A stretch of 64,000 nucleotides of DNA from Aplysia californica (lineage: Eukaryota), in assembly GCF_000002075.1 (NCBI RefSeq), contig NW_004798181.1:184133-248132 (forward strand). Reading direction: 5' to 3'. The notes under the pieces are model-generated. The model worked only from the letters and a program-made list of their open reading frames with translations, had not been told where the DNA came from and searched no databases. The position numbers were made by a program, and so were the translations under genes. Positions 13,511 through 20,647 of the stretch are shown here, in pieces (the first letter of the stretch is position 1; every line of letters begins with the position of its first letter).

Positions 13511-13639
13511 CTCAATTTTCTCACATTTACGTTGATTTGTTGTGATTCTAATGGTCAAATCCGTTCACATCACATCACATCAAAAAAACATCAGAAAATT
13601 ATTCATTTCTGCCTCAGTGACTCTATGCTATGCTAGAGG

Positions 13640-13840
13640 GATTTACCTTGTCCGTACACTCTTGATCAAATCCACTCTGTGGGTGGAGGGCTCGGTTTAC
13701 CTTGTCCGTACACTCTTGATCAAATCCACTCTGTGGGTGGAGGGCTCGGTTTACCTTGTCCGTACACTCTTGATCAAATCCACTCTGAGGGTGGAGGGTT
13801 TGGTTTACCTTGTCCGTACACTCTTGATCAAATCCACTCT
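13640..13840. repeat. 54-bp tandem repeat (~4 copies) containing the pogo left TIR
   Basis: TTTACCTTGTCCGTACACTCTTGATCAAATCCACTCTGTGGGTGGAGGGCTCGG units. Confidence 0.9.
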
Positions 13841-14810
13841 AGGGAGGAGGGCTCGGTCAGAAGCTCACTAGAGGGAGCTGCATTTTTTTAGGGCAGGTCG
13901 ACGAATACGGCAGTGAAGCTCAATGATCGGTCTACATGGGCGAGGTCACACTACAAATGGTGTTCTTTACAAAAAAGTCACATGACAATCTTCCCTCTCC
14001 TAAAGTGTTTCACTTTTCTCACTCAACCGGACACTTTTCCCAGATTCTCACGGACCCGAACACGTCTACAGGGGACAGGACACCCACTACTTATGCCCTA
14101 AACACTCAGTACTTTTCAACTAATCTAGACCTACAGAGAATCAGACACCCACTGTATAACCCCCCCCCCCCCAGACCAGACACTTCTTCAGAGGATCGGA
14201 CATCCCCTACTCAAGCCAAAATTAAGCCCTTCAGACCATATACTTCTACATCGGACTGGACACTCCATTTTCAAACCTAATAAATCTATACTTTTCGGAA
14301 TTACAGAGAATCGGAAACCCACCATCTAAGCCCCTCCGGCCGTACACTTCCACATGTGACCGGACACTGTATTCTTCTTCTTCTTTGTTCTCTCCATTCA
14401 AACCCAATATACTTTTTTCAAACTACAGAGCACCGCCTTGAATCTACCCCCTATTTAGGCCCTTTAGACTATACTTTCTAACCCCTGTTTAAGCCCCCCA
14501 GACCATATTTTCTAACAGAGGACAAGGCACCACTTGCACACATACAAACACACAACACATGCCCANNNNNNNNNNNNNNNNNNNNNNNNNNNNNNNNNNN
14601 NNNNNNNNNNNNNNNNNNNNNNNNNNNNNNNNNNNNNNNNNNNNNNNNNNNNNNNNNNNNNNNNNAGACTATACTTTCTAACCCCTGTTTAAGCCCCCCA
14701 GACCATTTTTTATTTCTGGCGACAGATAAGCACTTGCACACATACAAACACACAACACATGCCCACCTTCATGCACTCATTCTCTAAACCCTGTGTAAGT
14801 ATGCCTGAAA

Positions 14811-16436
14811 CTACTGGTTAGGGCAACACTTGTCACACACAAAGGAAAAGTCCTCCAGCTCCTCTACGGTTAAATTGGATGCTGACTTTGTGCAGCTTGT
14901 GTGCCACCAAGAATCACAAACTTCACAGGCTACCAACAGATCAGCCTCATGTCTTTTTGCAGCGCACCCTTTACATTTGTCATTCGATTCACCATATTCA
15001 TCCTCGACACTTTCCTCTTCATCTGCTTCTCTCATGATCTGTTCCACTTCCCCCTTCACGTTTTCATCCTCGTCGCTGTCACTTCGCTTTCTTTTCTTCG
15101 GAGCCCCCCTTTCTAACTTCTTCAGCAAAGCCTGGTCTTTCTTCTCCTGCCATTCGCCCTGCATCTCTGCTGCCTTTTCCTGCCTCGCCACTTCAGTCAT
15201 CTCCCTCCCAAGTCTCCTTTCCCAATTTTCTCTACTCTGCCCAGCCTCCTCTTCTCTTGCTGTCTTCCTAGCCAACTTTTCTTTCTCTTGTTTCTCTCTG
15301 GCACTCTCCTTCAATCTGATGGCTTCCCTGCGCTCTGCCCCACTCAGCACATTCTGCATCCTGGGTGCTGCTTTTTTCATCTTCTTTTTTCCCTTGCCAG
15401 AAAAGTTGGGGAGCCTGAGGATGTCATTGGAGGTCAGGGGCGCTCTAGACTGGGTGGTAACTTCAGGAATCTCAAATGAAGATTTTAAATTGGCTGCAAG
15501 CCTTTTAAATTGCATGAACCCCTCGTGGTTCTCTGTGGTGTCTCTTGTGAGGGCTTGATGACACCTCAAGAACCCATTCCTCCCGAGGTCGTCCACAACA
15601 AAAAGGGTGAAGTTTCTCATCGCCTCCAACTGTTTGACGGTGTACGCACTTTCAGGCTCTCGGGCTGCGCTTTGTTGGGGAGTTGGGGCTGAGGTTTGGA
15701 GTCCACTGCACGTCGGTTCTGGGGGCGTTGGCCCCCGACTTTGAGGCCGGTTTGAAATATCTTGGACGGGTGAAACTGCCAGAGGATCAAATGGAGATGG
15801 TGGCATTGGCTCAAATGGAGATGATGGCATTGGCTCAAATGGAGATGATGGCATTGGCTCAAATGGAGATGATGGCATTGGCTCATCCTTGATTGCATCA
15901 GGAAGCTGAGAATGTGCCACAGGCGGGGCAAGGACTGGGGGCGGAGACGTTGAAGAAGCCACAGGCCCGGTGGAGAAAAAGTCTCGAAACACCTGGCTGG
16001 GCAGCATCTTCTTGGTGAGAAGGACTCTCTCCGGTGAGAATGGAAAGATGCCAGCAGCCCTGAAGCTGGACTCTGCATTGGCTTTGGTAGCACAGCTTTG
16101 CCAAACAGGCTGGAACACTTTGGCGAAGGAGTCCAGGCCAACGGCATTCCCTGTCTCTGCCATGTGGCGCCTACTGGCTGCGGACCACGCAGATTTAACT
16201 GAACCAAAAAATGCCTGGTCCAAAGGTTGCACGAGATGGGAGGCGTGCGGCAGGAGGCAATACAGGATGACCTTGTTTTCCTCACAAATTTTGGAAATCT
16301 CCACAAGAGCTTTGTGGCTGACGTGGCCATCAACAAGCAACAGCAGTGGCTTTTCTATCTGTTCAGTTGCTGGGATAAAGGAATCCCTCAGCCATGTGAA
16401 GAAAATGGCCGAGGTGATCCGTCCATTGTCGGATAC
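14811..16436 (-). CDS. pogo-like transposase exon 3 (DDD core, Pro-rich linker, charged coiled region, C-terminal PHD finger)
   Basis: ttttgcag|VSDNGRITS...LLLLVDGHVSH...HASHLVQPLDQAFFGSVK...CKGC-x-CEVCDSWWHTSC-x-CDKC*; 36 residues counted between 2nd and 3rd Asp; spliced product 791 aa with no stops. Confidence 0.93.
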   Translation of the reverse strand, partial: VSDNGRITSAIFFTWLRDSFIPATEQIEKPLLLLVDGHVSHKALVEISKICEENKVILYCLLPHASHLVQPLDQAFFGSVKSAWSAASRRHMAETGNAVGLDSFAKVFQPVWQSCATKANAESSFRAAGIFPFSPERVLLTKKMLPSQVFRDFFSTGPVASSTSPPPVLAPPVAHSQLPDAIKDEPMPSSPFEPMPSSPFEPMPSSPFEPMPPSPFDPLAVSPVQDISNRPQSRGPTPPEPTCSGLQTSAPTPQQSAAREPESAYTVKQLEAMRNFTLFVVDDLGRNGFLRCHQALTRDTTENHEGFMQFKRLAANLKSSFEIPEVTTQSRAPLTSNDILRLPNFSGKGKKKMKKAAPRMQNVLSGAERREAIRLKESAREKQEKEKLARKTAREEEAGQSRENWERRLGREMTEVARQEKAAEMQGEWQEKKDQALLKKLERGAPKKRKRSDSDEDENVKGEVEQIMREADEEESVEDEYGESNDKCKGCAAKRHEADLLVACEVCDSWWHTSCTKSASNLTVEELEDFSFVCDKCCPNQ

Positions 16437-16587
16437 CTGCAAAAAAGTATTTTAGCTGCGTATTATGCACCAGAACACCAACTTGTGAAAGAACATTTTT
16501 AATTTGGTAAATTTAATTTCTTTGTCAATAGTATGGAGGCTGTGGATAACTTATAGCATTTGTATACTTTTTAAGAATATTTTTTAA

Positions 16588-16821
16588 CCCTATCCGTACG
16601 CCCTGGGGTCATTTTGTACCCTTGGGACTGTATTTTTCACATTTTAGAATACATCTAGTACGAAGATCTCTTTGAAACTTTCAGTATTTCTCAAAAAATC
16701 ATTTTGACAGACTCCTATGCAAAGAGTACGGATTAAAGAGAAAATTTCCTCTGTGAAAGTGGTGGCACAGAGTTCCCCACATCGCATGGATACGATAGTA
16801 AAACTCGACATACAGATAGGG
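16588..16821. mobile_element. piggyBac-like MITE (234 bp) in intron 2 of the pogo transposase
   Basis: TTAA|CCCTATCCGTACG ... CATACAGATAGGG|TTAA; 11/13 TIR match, TTAA TSD, CCC termini. Confidence 0.8.
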
Positions 16822-17143
16822 TTAAAAAGTATAACACTTCACTTCATTATTTTAAAATGTAAAACAGGTCTCACTGGACAACTATAACCCTTCATTATCT
16901 TAAATTCTAGAAAAGCGTAGTGGGTGGTTGGCAGATGCTGTGGTGTGGTTTGCTCCTTCTTTCCTATCAATCAAACATCTATCGTCCTTTTCTCTCCTAC
17001 TTCTTTTTTAAGTTCGTTACTCTCTAGTAACGCTTCTAATCTCCGACACTTGCATGACCTACTTTGGGTGCTGTAACTCTTACTAAACTAAAAAACAAAA
17101 GTAACTAAAAAAGTGTCAGAGAACAACTGAACAATTTTCTGAC

Positions 17144-17326
17144 CTGCAGCAAAGATTCAGGGAAACTTTCCAGTAGATTTTTGCCAGGTATCCGTTTGTA
17201 CGGGTAGATCAGCAACGGCGGCAGATACAACCCCGCAGCGTTCACGCTGGCCAACACTGTGACCTGTGTCTTGCTGTTTGCAGACAACGCTGTGTACACC
17301 GTCTTGGCCCCTTTGAATGCAATCAC
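17144..17326 (-). CDS. pogo-like transposase exon 2 (DDE_1 domain start)
   Basis: ttag|VIAFKGAK...QVTVLASVNAAGLYLPPLLIYP...LLQ|gtcaga; 183 nt, phase 0. Confidence 0.92.
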
Positions 17327-17738
17327 CTAAGGGAATACAGCGTAAAAAATTCCCTTTAATAGTGCTAAAAGTCAAACTCTATCTTAAGAACATACACATT
17401 TTTATGTGGCGTGAAGAAGTTTTCTCTTACATGTGCATCAGTTTAACGTGAACTTAATTTATTATTGTGGTTCAATCAAAATAATAGTTTCCAGATATAT
17501 CATCTCTGATAAAACAGGGAATATATATATTATATATATATAATTTTTCATATTTACAAACAAGATCATGTTAAGTTCGCTAAATAGAGTGAGTTCATAG
17601 CTGAAACAGATCCTTTTGAGCTCAAAGTAGATGTAACCAGGCCGATTCAGCAGTTACAATGAAATAAGAATCAAAATATTACATCTATTGATCTACCTTT
17701 AGAGGACACAACATTTATAAGTCAGCGATGAAACATAC

Positions 17739-18305
17739 CTTTCTTGATTTGGGATCGAAACTGAATCCACTCTCATCTGCATTGAAAATGCGAGTTGGGT
17801 CGCACAAAAGGGTGGGGTCCAGGGCATCCACGTGGGTTTTCAAGTCGTGAAACCATCTCTCCACATTTGGGGGAGTCACGAGGGCTCGCTCCTTCGCCAG
17901 CGACATCGGCGTCCTGAGGGAGAGCTCTGAGTGGCGCTCCAAGAAACGATAAACCCATGCCGGGGAGGGGAGATTTGAGGGGTCTTTTGTGGTCCCCCCA
18001 CTTAGTTCCATGATGGCCTTTGCCATGACCCTAATGTCGTCAGTGGTCTGCCCAAAACCCAGCTTAGACATCTTCAGCAACCACTGTACCAATCGTTCTT
18101 CCTCGTGCTGGGTGAGCAAGCTGTGAGGCACATACTCTATCGGTGACTTGCCATGCACCTTGTCCGAAAGGGTAGACACTGCAATGCCAAAATGCTTGGC
18201 CGCCTTCCTCAGCCCCATGGCTTTTGAACGAACGGCCTCAATGGCCGTTTCAAGCACAGCGACATCATGCTTTGCCTTTTTCTTCCCCTTTGGTGTTGGA
18301 GCCAT
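17739..18305 (-). CDS. pogo-like transposase exon 1 (HTH_psq + CENP-B-type HTH + first catalytic Asp)
   Basis: MAPTPKGKKK...GLRKAAKHFGIAVSTLSDKVHG...WVYRFLERH...IFNADESGF...RK|gtatgt; 567 nt, phase 0. Confidence 0.92.
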
Positions 18306-20647
18306 TGTCTGGGGATATAGACGCACACTTTATTCAAACACCCCCAAACAATGATTTAATGACATTTTATATAGATTCTAGCTGCTGAGATTTCACATTG
18401 AATGACTGATTTTAACTTCTCTTTTAAATTATATAAACAATATATATATATATATATATATTTCATTGAGAGTATTGCACATTTCCCTTGTTAAATCATC
18501 ATCATCATCACCGCTACCACCATCACCATCAGCAGCAGCATTGGTGGCAGCGGCATCATCATAACAACCATGGCAATCTTCTATACTCTCAAAAATTACA
18601 AAACAATGTCTGTCAAAATCATACCACTGTTTCTGCCTCCATAAGAACCTAACAATAACTATAGAGTCTAACACTTTAAATATTGTATTCATATTGTATG
18701 TCTTTAAACACTTTAAACATTGTATTCTTCGCTCACTAATATTCAGCACCAAAATCAGGACACAGGGCAAAAAGAAAAAAAATTATTATAAAAGTTTATC
18801 ACACATTCTAGATTACAATAAAATGCAGGATTCGAGAATTCTACAGCCAAACCATTTATAGTTAACATCTGAGCTGAAGGTGTGCGGACCCAGGAGAAAC
18901 ATGAGACATCTTCTTCATCGGTCCGTTAAAAAGAGTAAGGAAATAAGCGCCATTATAGAGCGTTTCGTGCACTAATATTCAGATGCATAAATTCTACTGC
19001 ACAAAAAAACCCCCAATAAATCGGAAGGACAAGAGAGGGCAGGTACTCACCGATTTCTAGAATGAAATTGTTCCAAAGAGTTTTTTTAAAAAGACGCCAC
19101 GTTATTTTTCTTGCAGCGGAAGGAAGTAGAAACATCACTTGAGGTAATTTTAAAGGTTGAAATTGCCTCATTTCGTGCACGAAACGAAATTATAAAATGT
19201 GGGTCACCAAAAATGGGCGGAACGAAAACGAACGACTAAGTGTACGGACATCGTAAATCTACCCTATGTGAGATCGGTCCAATGCAGCAAAATTACCCAA
19301 TGAAACGACATCACAATGATGTAGGGTAGACTTAATATCGGCATTCTCCAGTTTTGGCCTCAAGTGTAGTACTGACTTAAATATTCGGTATCGATGTTTT
19401 ATCCGAACGAGAGCGAGAGACCCGCTGTTATTTTCCAGTACAAAATGAGCAGATATTTCACTTGTTTAAAACTAAAAAGGGGGGTTTTTAGCCTGACAGG
19501 CACAAAAACATATGGGGTGTCAGGGGGGCATTTATTGAACCACAATTTGAAGTTTTGCAGTTAGGTTTGATATCTCTCCATGGCATCAGAATGCGCATAG
19601 AAAAGTAATCCTTTAGAACCAGAAGTAATCGTCGGTGGAGCCAAAACCCACACTCCATATATAGTTATCGGTATCGTTGGGGTCAAAACCAAAAACTGGA
19701 TTATCCCGACTAATCATTTTAACATAAAGGCCAGCTTTATAATTCGGACCAGTCCGATTCGATTTTTTTATCTATTTAGACTCGAGTCCGAAAATGGGTT
19801 TTACTTATTGGGACTCGGCTTCTACGTGAGTGTAAGGGGCTTACATAATATAACTGTCGTCTGGGGGATTTTACGTACAACCAGAATTAGAACTAGAATT
19901 ACTTACGAGGACTGTGTAACTGCACTGTCATTGCCTAATAGCAGTGTCTAGGTACACGGTAACCGACAACTCAGGGTCTTTCCACCACCACTACAGCGTC
20001 ATCATTACTTCCACCACCATTTGTCTTTCCACATGTCTATTTCATTTTGTGTGTTATAGGCCTTGATCTTCTGTAATTCATTTTTTTCCTTTTAATCACA
20101 TGATCAAGATTCTAGGCCTAGATTCTATTCTAACGTGTACTGTAAACTCTCTTCTCTCTTCAGCTCAGTACTTTTGTTCTCTTCTCTTACTTGAGCCTAG
20201 ACTTGACTGTAGCCTAGACCTATATATCTAGATCTGGAATCTACATCTAGATCTAGAAGAAAAAAGAATCGAAAAGGTTTTCCACCTGTCCTGTATCATG
20301 GTCTCCAAAATCCGTATATTAGATCTAGATCTACGTTACGACTGAATAATTAGCAAGCATAGAATGATAAAACCCTTTCTTTTTAAAAAAATTATATATT
20401 CCACTCACACCATAATCTACTTTAGTTTAGTTAGATCTAGAATCTAGAATCTAGATCTAGATTAGATATGTGTAGTCTAGTACTAGATCTAGTATAGTAA
20501 CCCATCATCATCATGGCCACTAGTAGACTAGATCCCCATAGTCAATAGATCTAATGGACCTGTACGTTTGTTCTCAGTGTCACTGGGAATAGTTTCTGGG
20601 CCGGTAATTGTTTACTTACTTGCATTTAATTCTGGGGAGGACTTCCG

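What the first reader, a model, noticed from the sequence alone, without database searches (positions are those of the whole stretch)
14811..18305. Intact three-exon pogo transposase fused to a PHD finger inside CDC16: domestication or chromatin-targeted transposon candidate
Seen: a 791-aa spliced frame with no stops (psq HTH, CENP-B HTH, complete D-D36-D triad, Pro-rich repeat linker, charged helix, C4HC3 PHD). Its TIRs are diverged, and intron 2 has acquired a piggyBac MITE and a decayed SINE. Established: pogo transposases have been repeatedly domesticated (CENP-B, JRK, TIGD, POGZ); PHD fingers often read histone H3 tails; PHD-bearing pogo elements do occur in invertebrates. Inference: decayed non-coding parts with a pristine ORF suggest purifying selection at this locus, or the PHD steered insertion near an active promoter.
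Basis: partly seen in the sequence, partly recalled or inferred. Interest (0 to 1): 0.75.

Follow-up and report, generated by a model that had tools for sequence, protein, structure and literature searches.

The report
Lone intact PHD-bearing pogo transposon in CDC16
A complete old jumping gene sits inside a sea-slug cell-cycle gene, and its enzyme gene has stayed readable long after its relatives decayed, so it may be on its way to becoming a host gene.

Summary
The 791-codon, three-exon frame is real and carries HTH_psq, HTH_Tnp_Tc5, DDE_1 (DD36D) and a C4HC3 PHD finger. It is the transposase gene of a complete 5.6-kb pogo-type transposon (window 13636-19264, minus strand, TA-flanked TIRs). 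The transposon lies in sense orientation in intron 1 of the CDC16 homologue.

The PHD is not a local fusion. It is the standard C-terminal module of a gastropod-wide clade of pogo transposases: 5 of 5 distant intact elements in this genome, plus Biomphalaria, Physella, Plakobranchus and Haliotis.

This copy is the only intact one of about nine old family loci, and none exceeds 83% nucleotide identity to it. Both introns and the SINE-like repeat are ancestral to the family. Only the piggyBac-type MITE is private, and it is 6.7% diverged from its consensus.

On its own branch the ORF shows pN/pS 0.48 (0.25-0.30 in DDE and PHD). Exon indels outside the Pro-rich repeat are in-frame. Survival under neutrality has P of 3e-2 down to below 1e-5. 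This supports selection but does not prove domestication.

RefSeq's model splices the upstream exon, probably CDC16 exon 1, in frame onto the transposase. Three RNA runs showed almost no reads and no junctions. No ortholog test was possible.

The parts
19265..19266 (-). TA flanking the 5' end (target-site duplication, one half)
   Evidence: Direct reading.
19239..19264 (-). 5' terminal inverted repeat
   Evidence: I3-I7: 21-nt core 90%, 26 nt 81% complementary. Ends aligned with paralogues.
18309..19238 (-). 5' non-coding part of the element. It ends in a pyrimidine tract plus AG (18310-18309) 3 nt before the ATG.
   Evidence: Homology to C162/C480 extends up to about 19230. The acceptor-like motif is also present in C162. 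An in-frame TAA at 18332-18330 was read.
17739..18305 (-). Transposase exon 1 (189 codons): HTH_psq, HTH_Tnp_Tc5, first catalytic Asp (codon at 17777-17775)
17327..17738 (-). Intron 1 (GT..AG), shared with paralogues C162 and C52
17144..17326 (-). Transposase exon 2 (61 codons)
16437..17143 (-). Intron 2 (GT..AG). It contains an ancestral short interspersed repeat (core about 17060-16920) and the private MITE.
16583..16826 (.). piggyBac-type MITE with TTAA on both sides; absent from all paralogues
   Evidence: 16/238 = 6.7% from the consensus of 21 copies.
14811..16436 (-). Transposase exon 3 (541 codons plus stop). It holds the rest of DDE_1 (Asp codons 16331-16329 and 16220-16218), the Pro-rich repeat, a helical hairpin, the K/E-rich long helix and the PHD.
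15787..15885 (-). 24-bp tandem repeat, 4.1 copies (Pro-rich 8-residue repeat)
14826..14975 (-). PHD finger (C4HC3)
14709..14714 (-). AATAAA, 97 nt after the stop codon (candidate poly(A) signal)
   Evidence: Direct reading; not supported by reads.
14565..14664 (.). Run of N inside the 3' non-coding part, flanked by a direct repeat; left untouched
13642..13857 (.). 54-bp tandem array, 4 copies at 95% matches, each repeating the TIR core
13636..13660 (+). Outermost 3' terminal inverted repeat, preceded by TA at 13634-13635
28931..29053 (-). Upstream coding exon (41 codons, phase-0 donor). RefSeq's model splices it to 18308. It is probably CDC16 exon 1.
   Evidence: Not confirmed as CDC16 by any tool.
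10116..10170 (-). CDC16 exon 2 (phase-0 start, phase-1 end)
8955..9050 (-). CDC16 exon 3, matching human CDC16 residues 37-70

Best explanation
The frame is the transposase gene of a structurally complete pogo-superfamily DNA transposon (TA|TIR ... TIR|TA, 13636-19264, minus strand). It is inserted in sense orientation in intron 1 of the CDC16 homologue.

Its architecture is HTH_psq, HTH_Tnp_Tc5, DDE_1 with DD36D, Pro-rich repeats, a helical hairpin, a long K/E-rich helix and a C-terminal PHD. This is the normal architecture of a clade of pogo transposases spread through gastropods, so the PHD serves the transposon's own biology. It most likely tethers the transposase to chromatin. Its nearest solved relatives are the KMT2C/KMT2D fingers that bind the histone H4 tail and H4K16ac.

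This copy is the last intact member of an old family of about nine loci whose two introns arose before the family diversified. It has sat long enough for a private MITE to diverge by about 6.7% and for its TIR cores to pick up 2 mismatches. The ORF nevertheless has no stop, exon indels outside the Pro-rich repeat are in-frame, and there is an excess of synonymous change.

I therefore read it as a transposase gene kept open by selection at this locus: an early, lineage-specific domestication or host capture that has not yet shed its transposon ends.

Shown: the anatomy, the family, the ancestral PHD and introns, the dating, and the selection signals. Inferred: that selection acts for the host rather than for the element, that the PHD binds histones, and that transcription may come from the CDC16 promoter through the acceptor just before the ATG.
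For: Anatomy.

Copy number: with all candidates scored (10 of 10 and 7 of 7), no other locus exceeds 83% nucleotide identity.

Paralogue state: C162 has 1 TAG. C131 has 10 stops in its main match and 4 more in its 3'-terminal piece. C480 has 3 and C22 has 11.

Tree from three-way counts: (window, C131) against (C162, C480, C52).

Window branch in exon 3: 35 synonymous and 61 non-synonymous changes, pN/pS 0.48, p = 7e-4. By region: DDE 0.30, PHD 0.25, linkers 0.55-0.69.

Indels: exon indels outside the repeat are 3, 3, 3 and 6 nt, against 5 of 23 multiples of three in non-coding parts.

Dating: the MITE is 16/238 = 6.7% from consensus (95% CI 3.9-10.7%); the other 21 copies range 2.0-9.0%, median 4.1%. 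The window's non-coding branch is 5-7%.

Neutral ORF survival: 3e-2 at d = 2% with few indels, 8.6e-6 or less at d = 6.7%.

PHD ancestral: 5 of 5 distant intronless ORFs of 711-876 aa in this genome pass Pfam's PHD cut-off together with DDE_1. Of 10 long tail-matching proteins, 9 have DDE_1 and 7 have a PHD hit. They are named from Biomphalaria, Physella, Plakobranchus and Haliotis.

PHD type; passages of PMC6534582.

RefSeq protein XP_012944713.1 joins the upstream exon in frame.
Against: TIRs, the TA duplication and all three catalytic Asp are retained. By the working criterion of PMC7386202 (passages) that makes it a transposon, not a domesticated gene.

pN/pS of 0.48 is far above the 0.06-0.14 listed there for the three domesticated pogo genes visible in the passage (TIGD4, POGK, POGZ). 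It does not differ significantly from the dead sister C131 (22 synonymous, 59 non-synonymous; Fisher p = 0.20). Raw exon identity to paralogues is no higher than intron identity.

Three poly(A) RNA runs of about 1.3-1.5 Gb each gave zero depth on exons 1 and 2 and the 5' half of exon 3. They gave depth of at most 2.6 on 14825-15599, no intron joint and no loose end at 18308.

The MITE age assumes that a consensus-like copy inserted.

No protein above 40% identity exists in other species among 298-947-aa proteins, so no old orthologue is known.
Confidence: 0.45

Rival explanations
1. It is still an autonomous, very low-copy transposon. The ORF is kept by selection on the element itself through occasional cut-and-paste moves, and the host gains nothing.
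For: The TIR core is 19 of 21 matched, TA flanks both ends, DD36D is intact and both HTH domains are intact. The sister subfamily (C162, C480, C52) has short private branches of 2-5%, so the family moved fairly recently. Other pogo-PHD lineages in the genome have long open frames. By the criterion in PMC7386202 it counts as a transposon.
Against: No copy above 83% identity and none carrying the MITE was found in the 927-Mb assembly. Element-level selection needs copies. TIR mismatches, MITE age and branch length all suggest about 5-7% of residence without offspring.
Confidence: 0.3
2. The functional product is a host-transposase fusion. CDC16 exon 1 (41 residues) is alternatively spliced onto the acceptor 3 nt before the transposase ATG. 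This gives an 833-aa protein driven by the CDC16 promoter (transposase capture).
For: RefSeq isoform X1 has exactly this structure. Donor and acceptor are both phase 0. The element is in sense orientation in intron 1. A pyrimidine tract plus AG precedes the ATG in paralogue C162 too, so the acceptor is native to the family. The mechanism is described in the abstract of 10.1101/2020.05.07.082677.
Against: This is a computational model only. No read joined or ended loose at 18308 in three RNA runs. The 41-residue exon carries no recognisable domain. It had no PDB match and occurs in no other 458-1458-aa protein in the database. Its assignment to CDC16 rests on position, phase and my recall.
Confidence: 0.2
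3. It is a dead relic whose ORF is intact by chance.
For: Exon and intron identities to paralogues are alike. Expression is very low. pN/pS does not differ significantly from the dead sister copy.
Against: Simulated neutral survival is 3e-2 at the most lenient setting and below 1e-5 at the measured MITE divergence. Exon indels outside the repeat are in-frame. There is a synonymous excess, p = 7e-4. The sister C131 gained 6 stop-making changes and many frameshifts over a similar branch.
Confidence: 0.05

Closest known systems
pogo superfamily transposons (Tigger, pogoR, Mover and others) as surveyed in PMC7386202 and PMC7325037
   Same: HTH_psq/HTH_Tnp_Tc5 DNA-binding region, DDE_1 with a DDD triad (DD36D lies within the reported DD29-56D range), TA duplication and short TIRs.
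   Different: It has a C-terminal PHD finger preceded by a helical hairpin and a long K/E-rich helix. It has two introns. Its length of 5.6 kb exceeds the 1.2-5.2 kb range reported. Neither survey's main text contains the word PHD (0 occurrences each); their supplements were not seen.
Domesticated pogo transposases (CENPB, JRK, TIGD1-7, POGK, POGZ)
   Same: An intact pogo-derived ORF that is single-copy in its lineage, with signs of purifying selection. POGK and POGZ are chimeras with host domains (passage).
   Different: Those genes lack TIRs and TSDs and the three listed in the passage I saw have Ka/Ks of 0.06-0.14. Here the ends are intact, pN/pS is 0.48, and the accessory domain came with the transposon.
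Host-transposase fusion genes by transposase capture (Cosby et al., preprint 10.1101/2020.05.07.082677; abstract read)
   Same: A transposon in a host intron in sense orientation, with a splice acceptor ahead of the transposase ORF and an in-frame model joining a host exon to it.
   Different: The described cases are tetrapod and mostly fuse DNA-binding domains to KRAB-type domains. Here the whole transposase would be joined to 41 residues with no known domain, and there is no transcript evidence in my hands.
PHD6 of KMT2D (MLL4) and the matching finger of KMT2C (MLL3) (PDB 6o7g, 6mlc; PMC6534582)
   Same: Best sequence hits (E 5.7e-6 and 1.7e-6) and best fold hits (rmsd 2.0-2.2 A, 34-35% identity). 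The Leu-Leu strand and the Trp before the zinc-binding His align with residues that contact H4K16ac.
   Different: Not all contact residues are kept: Val and Ala replace Ile and Gln. Binding is untested. Foldseek E-values are weaker than 1e-3.
Other transposases with PHD-type fingers: Ginger1-9_HM and Mutator (PMC2836005), and the piggyBac C-terminal cross-brace finger (PMC5861402)
   Same: An accessory cross-brace zinc finger at the C-terminus of a DDE transposase (passages; listing and abstract start).
   Different: These are different superfamilies. The piggyBac finger binds transposon-end DNA rather than histones, which is an alternative role for the finger here.

Membership tests
pogo superfamily DNA transposon | DDE_1 catalytic domain with a D-D-D triad | tested here: met
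   DDE_1 9.6e-14 on exon 3. The three Asp were read and are conserved in P0002-P0005. The spacing of 36 lies within DD29-56D.
pogo superfamily DNA transposon | N-terminal psq and CENP-B/Tc5-type helix-turn-helix domains | tested here: met
   HTH_psq 8.3e-10 and HTH_Tnp_Tc5 2.3e-9.
pogo superfamily DNA transposon | Terminal inverted repeats flanked by a TA duplication | tested here: met
   The 21-nt core is 90% complementary. TA lies at 19266-19265 and 13634-13635. A 2-bp duplication is weak evidence on its own.
pogo superfamily DNA transposon | Dispersed homologous copies in the genome | tested here: met
   C131, C162, C480, C52, C22, C40, C244 and C118 at 66-83% identity.
Domesticated (stationary) transposase gene | Loss of TIRs and TSD | tested here: not met
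   Both are present.
Domesticated (stationary) transposase gene | Orthologous single-copy locus kept across species | not testable with these tools
   No related mollusc genome is reachable. Nothing above 40% identity was found among 298-947-aa proteins.
Domesticated (stationary) transposase gene | dN/dS well below 1 on the gene's own lineage | tested here: inconclusive
   pN/pS is 0.48, p = 7e-4 against neutrality. It does not differ from the dead sister copy, p = 0.20. ORF survival and in-frame indels argue for constraint.
Domesticated (stationary) transposase gene | Expression | tested here: inconclusive
   Depth is at most 2.6 on part of exon 3 in 3 RNA runs.
Host-transposase fusion gene | Transcript joining a host exon to the transposase by splicing | tested here: inconclusive
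   Only the RefSeq model supports it. No joint or loose end was seen, at near-zero depth.
Host-transposase fusion gene | Junction in frame | tested here: met
   The donor after codon 41 (28931) and the acceptor before ACA-ATG (18308) are both phase 0.
PHD finger | C4HC3 ligand pattern and PHD fold | tested here: met
   The pattern was read. Pfam gives 23.8 bits against a cut-off of 24. PDB phmmer gives 1.7e-6. The model has pLDDT 90-95 over the finger, and the 40-odd top Foldseek rows shown are all PHD fingers or PHD-containing proteins.
PHD finger | Binding of a histone tail | not testable with these tools
   Only the resemblance to the H4-binding fingers is available.

The most novel reading that the evidence does not exclude
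Aplysia has caught a whole PHD-bearing pogo transposase in the act of becoming a host gene. It would be transcribed from the CDC16 promoter by alternative splicing of CDC16 exon 1 onto a splice acceptor that the transposon family carries just ahead of its ATG. The resulting 833-aa protein would still bind its own dispersed TIRs and read acetylated or unmodified H4 tails. It would be an invertebrate example of transposase capture that brings a DNA-binding module and a chromatin reader together.
Probability: 0.15. Interest if true: 0.75.

Novelty: new variant of a known kind. Interest (0 to 1): 0.5.

Why it matters
There are two points of interest.

First, pogo transposases with a built-in PHD finger form a clade across gastropods. 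The two broad pogo surveys that I searched do not mention it in their main text. A chromatin-reading module inside a Tc1/mariner-like transposase bears on how cut-and-paste elements choose targets, and it could inspire targeted integration tools.

Second, this locus is a rare snapshot of the grey zone between transposon and gene. It is a complete element with an ORF that has outlived its family, sitting in sense orientation in a housekeeping gene with a ready-made in-frame splice route. If orthology and transcripts confirm it, the first steps of transposase capture become testable in an invertebrate model used in neurobiology.

Tried and rejected
A whole-element DNA search was swamped by MITE hits: only 40 of 9102 candidates were scored. 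I repeated it with the exon-3 stretch and with the exon-1-to-exon-2 stretch alone, where all candidates were scored.

My first MITE divergence wrongly included 10-bp flanks. It was redone on the 244 core columns.

MAFFT G-INS-i on the five elements timed out, so I used --auto.

The bacterial promoter and terminator scan is meaningless for an animal gene and is ignored.

Rfam and ARAGORN found nothing in intron 2, so the SINE label stays unverified.

The 41-residue upstream exon had no PDB match at E up to 10. No other protein of 458-1458 aa carries it. That it is CDC16 exon 1 therefore rests on position, strand, phase fit to exon 2 and my recalled likeness to the human N-terminus.

I suspected that loci C1306 and C437 were sibling pogo copies sharing the MITE. 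Their homology stops at the MITE end and inside the intron, so they are other copies of the interspersed repeat with a MITE beside it.

Foldseek found no match for the helical hairpin ahead of the K/E helix.

Literature searches for a described PHD-bearing pogo found none. Searches in the two surveys gave 0 occurrences of 'PHD' in the main text. Supplements are closed and may list such elements, and Repbase could not be consulted.

With hindsight the small runs X2, X3 and X7-X13 would have been more telling.


Full report
THE OBSERVATION. On the minus strand there is a three-exon frame: exon 1 at 18305-17739, exon 2 at 17326-17144, exon 3 at 16436-14811. That is 189 + 61 + 541 codons with no stop and GT..AG at both introns.

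I searched each exon on its own.

Pfam finds HTH_psq (8.3e-10) and HTH_Tnp_Tc5 (2.3e-9) in exon 1. It finds DDE_1 (9.6e-14) and PHD (4.6e-5; 23.8 bits against a cut-off of 24) in exon 3. Exon 2 has only a noise hit.

The PHD is confirmed by PDB sequence matches to the PHD fingers of KMT2C and KMT2D (E 1.7e-6 and 5.7e-6). It is also confirmed by a confident model: pLDDT is 90-95 over the finger, and the 40-odd top Foldseek rows shown are all PHD fingers or PHD-containing proteins, although none reaches E 1e-3.

Homologues from other snails run without a break across both intron positions. The splice model therefore restores conserved protein sequence exactly.

THE ELEMENT IS LARGER THAN REPORTED. 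Homology to paralogous copies runs from about 19264 to about 13800. The ends are a 26-nt 5' TIR (19264-19239) and a 25-nt 3' TIR (13636-13660), sharing a 21-nt core that is 90% complementary. Each is flanked by TA. The element is thus 5,629 bp.

The 3' end carries a 54-bp unit repeated four times, each unit with a copy of the TIR core. A run of N (14565-14664) lies in the 3' non-coding part, and I left it alone.

THE HOST. The exon at 9050-8955 matches residues 37-70 of human CDC16 (E 4.5e-8). It is also the ANAPC3 Pfam hit in this contig. A phase-compatible exon 2 lies at 10170-10116.

A 41-codon exon at 29053-28931 ends in phase 0. The transposon lies between that exon and exon 2, on the gene's own strand, which puts it in intron 1. 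No tool confirmed that the 41-codon exon belongs to CDC16.

FAMILY AND COPY NUMBER. With the MITE left out of the query, and so with all candidates scored, the genome holds no copy above 83% identity. Relatives lie at C131, C162, C480, C52, C22, C40, C244 and C118, at 66-83% identity.

All of them are broken. C162 has one TAG. C131 has ten stops in its main match, four more in its 3'-terminal piece, and lacks most of its 5' half. C480 has internal deletions.

Both introns, their splice sites and the short interspersed repeat in intron 2 are shared by the paralogues that cover them. These features belong to the family's ancestor and were not gained at this locus. Only the 244-bp TTAA-flanked MITE is private to the window copy.

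THE PHD IS ANCESTRAL TO A CLADE. A six-frame protein search of the genome gave 90 matches, many reaching the last residues of the query at 26-45% identity. I fetched eight such loci. Five have ORFs of 711-876 aa ending in a cysteine-rich finger. All five score DDE_1 plus PHD above Pfam's cut-off, and four of the five also have both HTH domains.

A full HMMER scan with the last 293 residues found only 63 cluster representatives at E up to 1e-3. I examined ten of the long ones. Nine have DDE_1 and seven have a PHD hit. Their names come from Biomphalaria glabrata, B. pfeifferi, Physella acuta, Plakobranchus ocellatus, Haliotis cracherodii and H. rufescens.

The two broad surveys of pogo do not contain the word PHD in their main text; I could not see their supplements. 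PHD fingers are reported in Ginger1 and Mutator transposases (passages of PMC2836005).

IS THE ORF UNDER SELECTION? Three-way site counts place the window with C131, against a tight group of C162, C480 and C52.

The deep branch between the two groups has pN/pS of 0.16-0.19, as expected of a working transposase. The window's own branch in exon 3 has 35 synonymous and 61 non-synonymous changes. That gives pN/pS 0.48, with a synonymous excess at p = 7e-4. By region it is 0.30 in the DDE part, 0.25 in the PHD and 0.55-0.69 in the linkers.

The dead sister C131 has 22 synonymous and 59 non-synonymous changes (0.74), six of which make stops. The two branches do not differ significantly (p = 0.20).

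Raw identity to paralogues is no higher in exons than in introns, so constraint is modest.

The stronger signal is the integrity of the frame. Window-specific exon indels outside the Pro-rich repeat are 3, 3, 3 and 6 nt. In the non-coding parts only 5 of 23 indels are multiples of three (p = 0.007).

The private MITE differs from the consensus of 21 family copies at 16 of 238 sites. That is 6.7% (CI 3.9-10.7%); the other copies range 2.0-9.0% with a median of 4.1%. This is about the same as the window's non-coding branch of 5-7%. It is compatible with 2 mismatches in the 2 x 21 TIR core sites.

Simulated neutral decay leaves the 2,373-nt frame intact with probability 3e-2 at the most lenient setting (2% divergence, few indels). 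At 6.7% the probability is 8.6e-6 or less.

Together these results say that the frame has been kept open for a long time during which the lineage left no surviving copy.

EXPRESSION AND THE FUSION MODEL. The database holds the identical protein as XP_012944713.1, 'uncharacterized protein LOC101864422 isoform X1 [Aplysia californica]'. It is 833 aa: the 41-codon upstream exon, one Thr codon and then the 791 codons.

The acceptor (AG at 18310-18309) lies 3 nt before the ATG. A pyrimidine tract plus AG stands at the same place in paralogue C162. The family therefore seems to carry a native acceptor ahead of its start codon. This is the layout that allows transposase capture by alternative splicing (abstract of 10.1101/2020.05.07.082677).

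I could not confirm the junction. Three poly(A) RNA runs gave zero depth over exons 1 and 2 and the 5' half of exon 3. They gave depth of at most 2.6 over 14825-15599, no joints and no loose end at 18308. The fourth run, X1, was DNA and collinear with the window.

Several small runs of 82-462 million letters hold 40-91% of the exon-3 words. They are too small to be whole-genome DNA of a 927-Mb genome, so they are probably RNA. Some carry another organism label. My single read-laying run was already spent, so this remains an inference.

HOW IT PROBABLY WORKS. The protein keeps everything a pogo transposase needs. The tail adds a helical hairpin, a helix of about 75 residues rich in Lys and Glu, and the PHD.

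The finger is closest to the KMT2C/KMT2D fingers that bind the H4 tail and H4K16ac. It keeps the Leu-Leu strand and the Trp that line the acetyl-lysine groove. I therefore favour tethering to open chromatin.

The alternative is binding of the element's own ends, as the cross-brace finger of piggyBac does (listing and abstract start of PMC5861402).

VERDICT. I give 0.45 to selection at this locus (incipient domestication or capture). I give 0.30 to a still-mobile low-copy element and 0.05 to chance.

The scan had already noted a pogo-like DDE-PHD transposon on another piece of this genome (s1-721802). This agrees with my own finding that the architecture is widespread in the genome.

Noticed in passing
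window 13642-13857: The 3' end of the element is a 54-bp unit repeated four times at 95% matches. Each unit carries a copy of the TIR core, so the element has four candidate 3' ends. The paralogues have a single copy.
   Followed up: partly
window 14465-14770: The run of N (14565-14664) is flanked by a direct repeat of about 100 bp. The paralogues have no counterpart for about 156 alignment columns there. This looks like an unclosed assembly gap with overlapping ends. I did not fill it or look it up.
   Followed up: no
window about 14935 (PHD codon); C162 and C131 copies: C162 and C131 lie on opposite sides of the family tree, yet both carry TAG at the same PHD codon where the window has TTG and C480 has TTT. 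This could be parallel change or exchange between copies.
   Followed up: no
L009 (G000:C1306) and L030 (G000:C437): Two other loci have the same interspersed repeat directly followed by the same MITE as in intron 2. Homology stops at the MITE end. This suggests either a preferred TTAA in that repeat or a composite repeat.
   Followed up: partly
L051-L054, L056 (G000: C156, C163, C42, C136, C325): These are intronless pogo-PHD ORFs of 711-876 aa with no stops, 26-40% identical to the window protein. C136 has two equal-scoring copies 9 kb apart. They may be younger, possibly active lineages.
   Followed up: partly
window 17738/17327 and 17143/16437: Both introns sit at AG|GT sites in sequence that is uninterrupted in the distant relatives within this genome. 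The introns were therefore gained in this family's ancestor. Intron 2 is largely an interspersed repeat, which hints at intron gain through a repeat insertion.
   Followed up: no
window 15447: An A>G difference from the window appears in all of DNA run X1's depth at that site and in 3 RNA reads. By my reading it is a synonymous third-position change in a Ser codon.
   Followed up: partly
runs X7-X11: Runs labelled as a second organism (82-103 million letters) hold 49-60% of the exact 31-mers of exon 3. This implies a near-identical expressed copy under another species label. I could not lay them.
   Followed up: no
window 2700-3760 and 6776-7850: Long coding-looking tandem repeats (minisatellites) lie in the downstream CDC16 introns. 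They were seen only in the ORF list.
   Followed up: no
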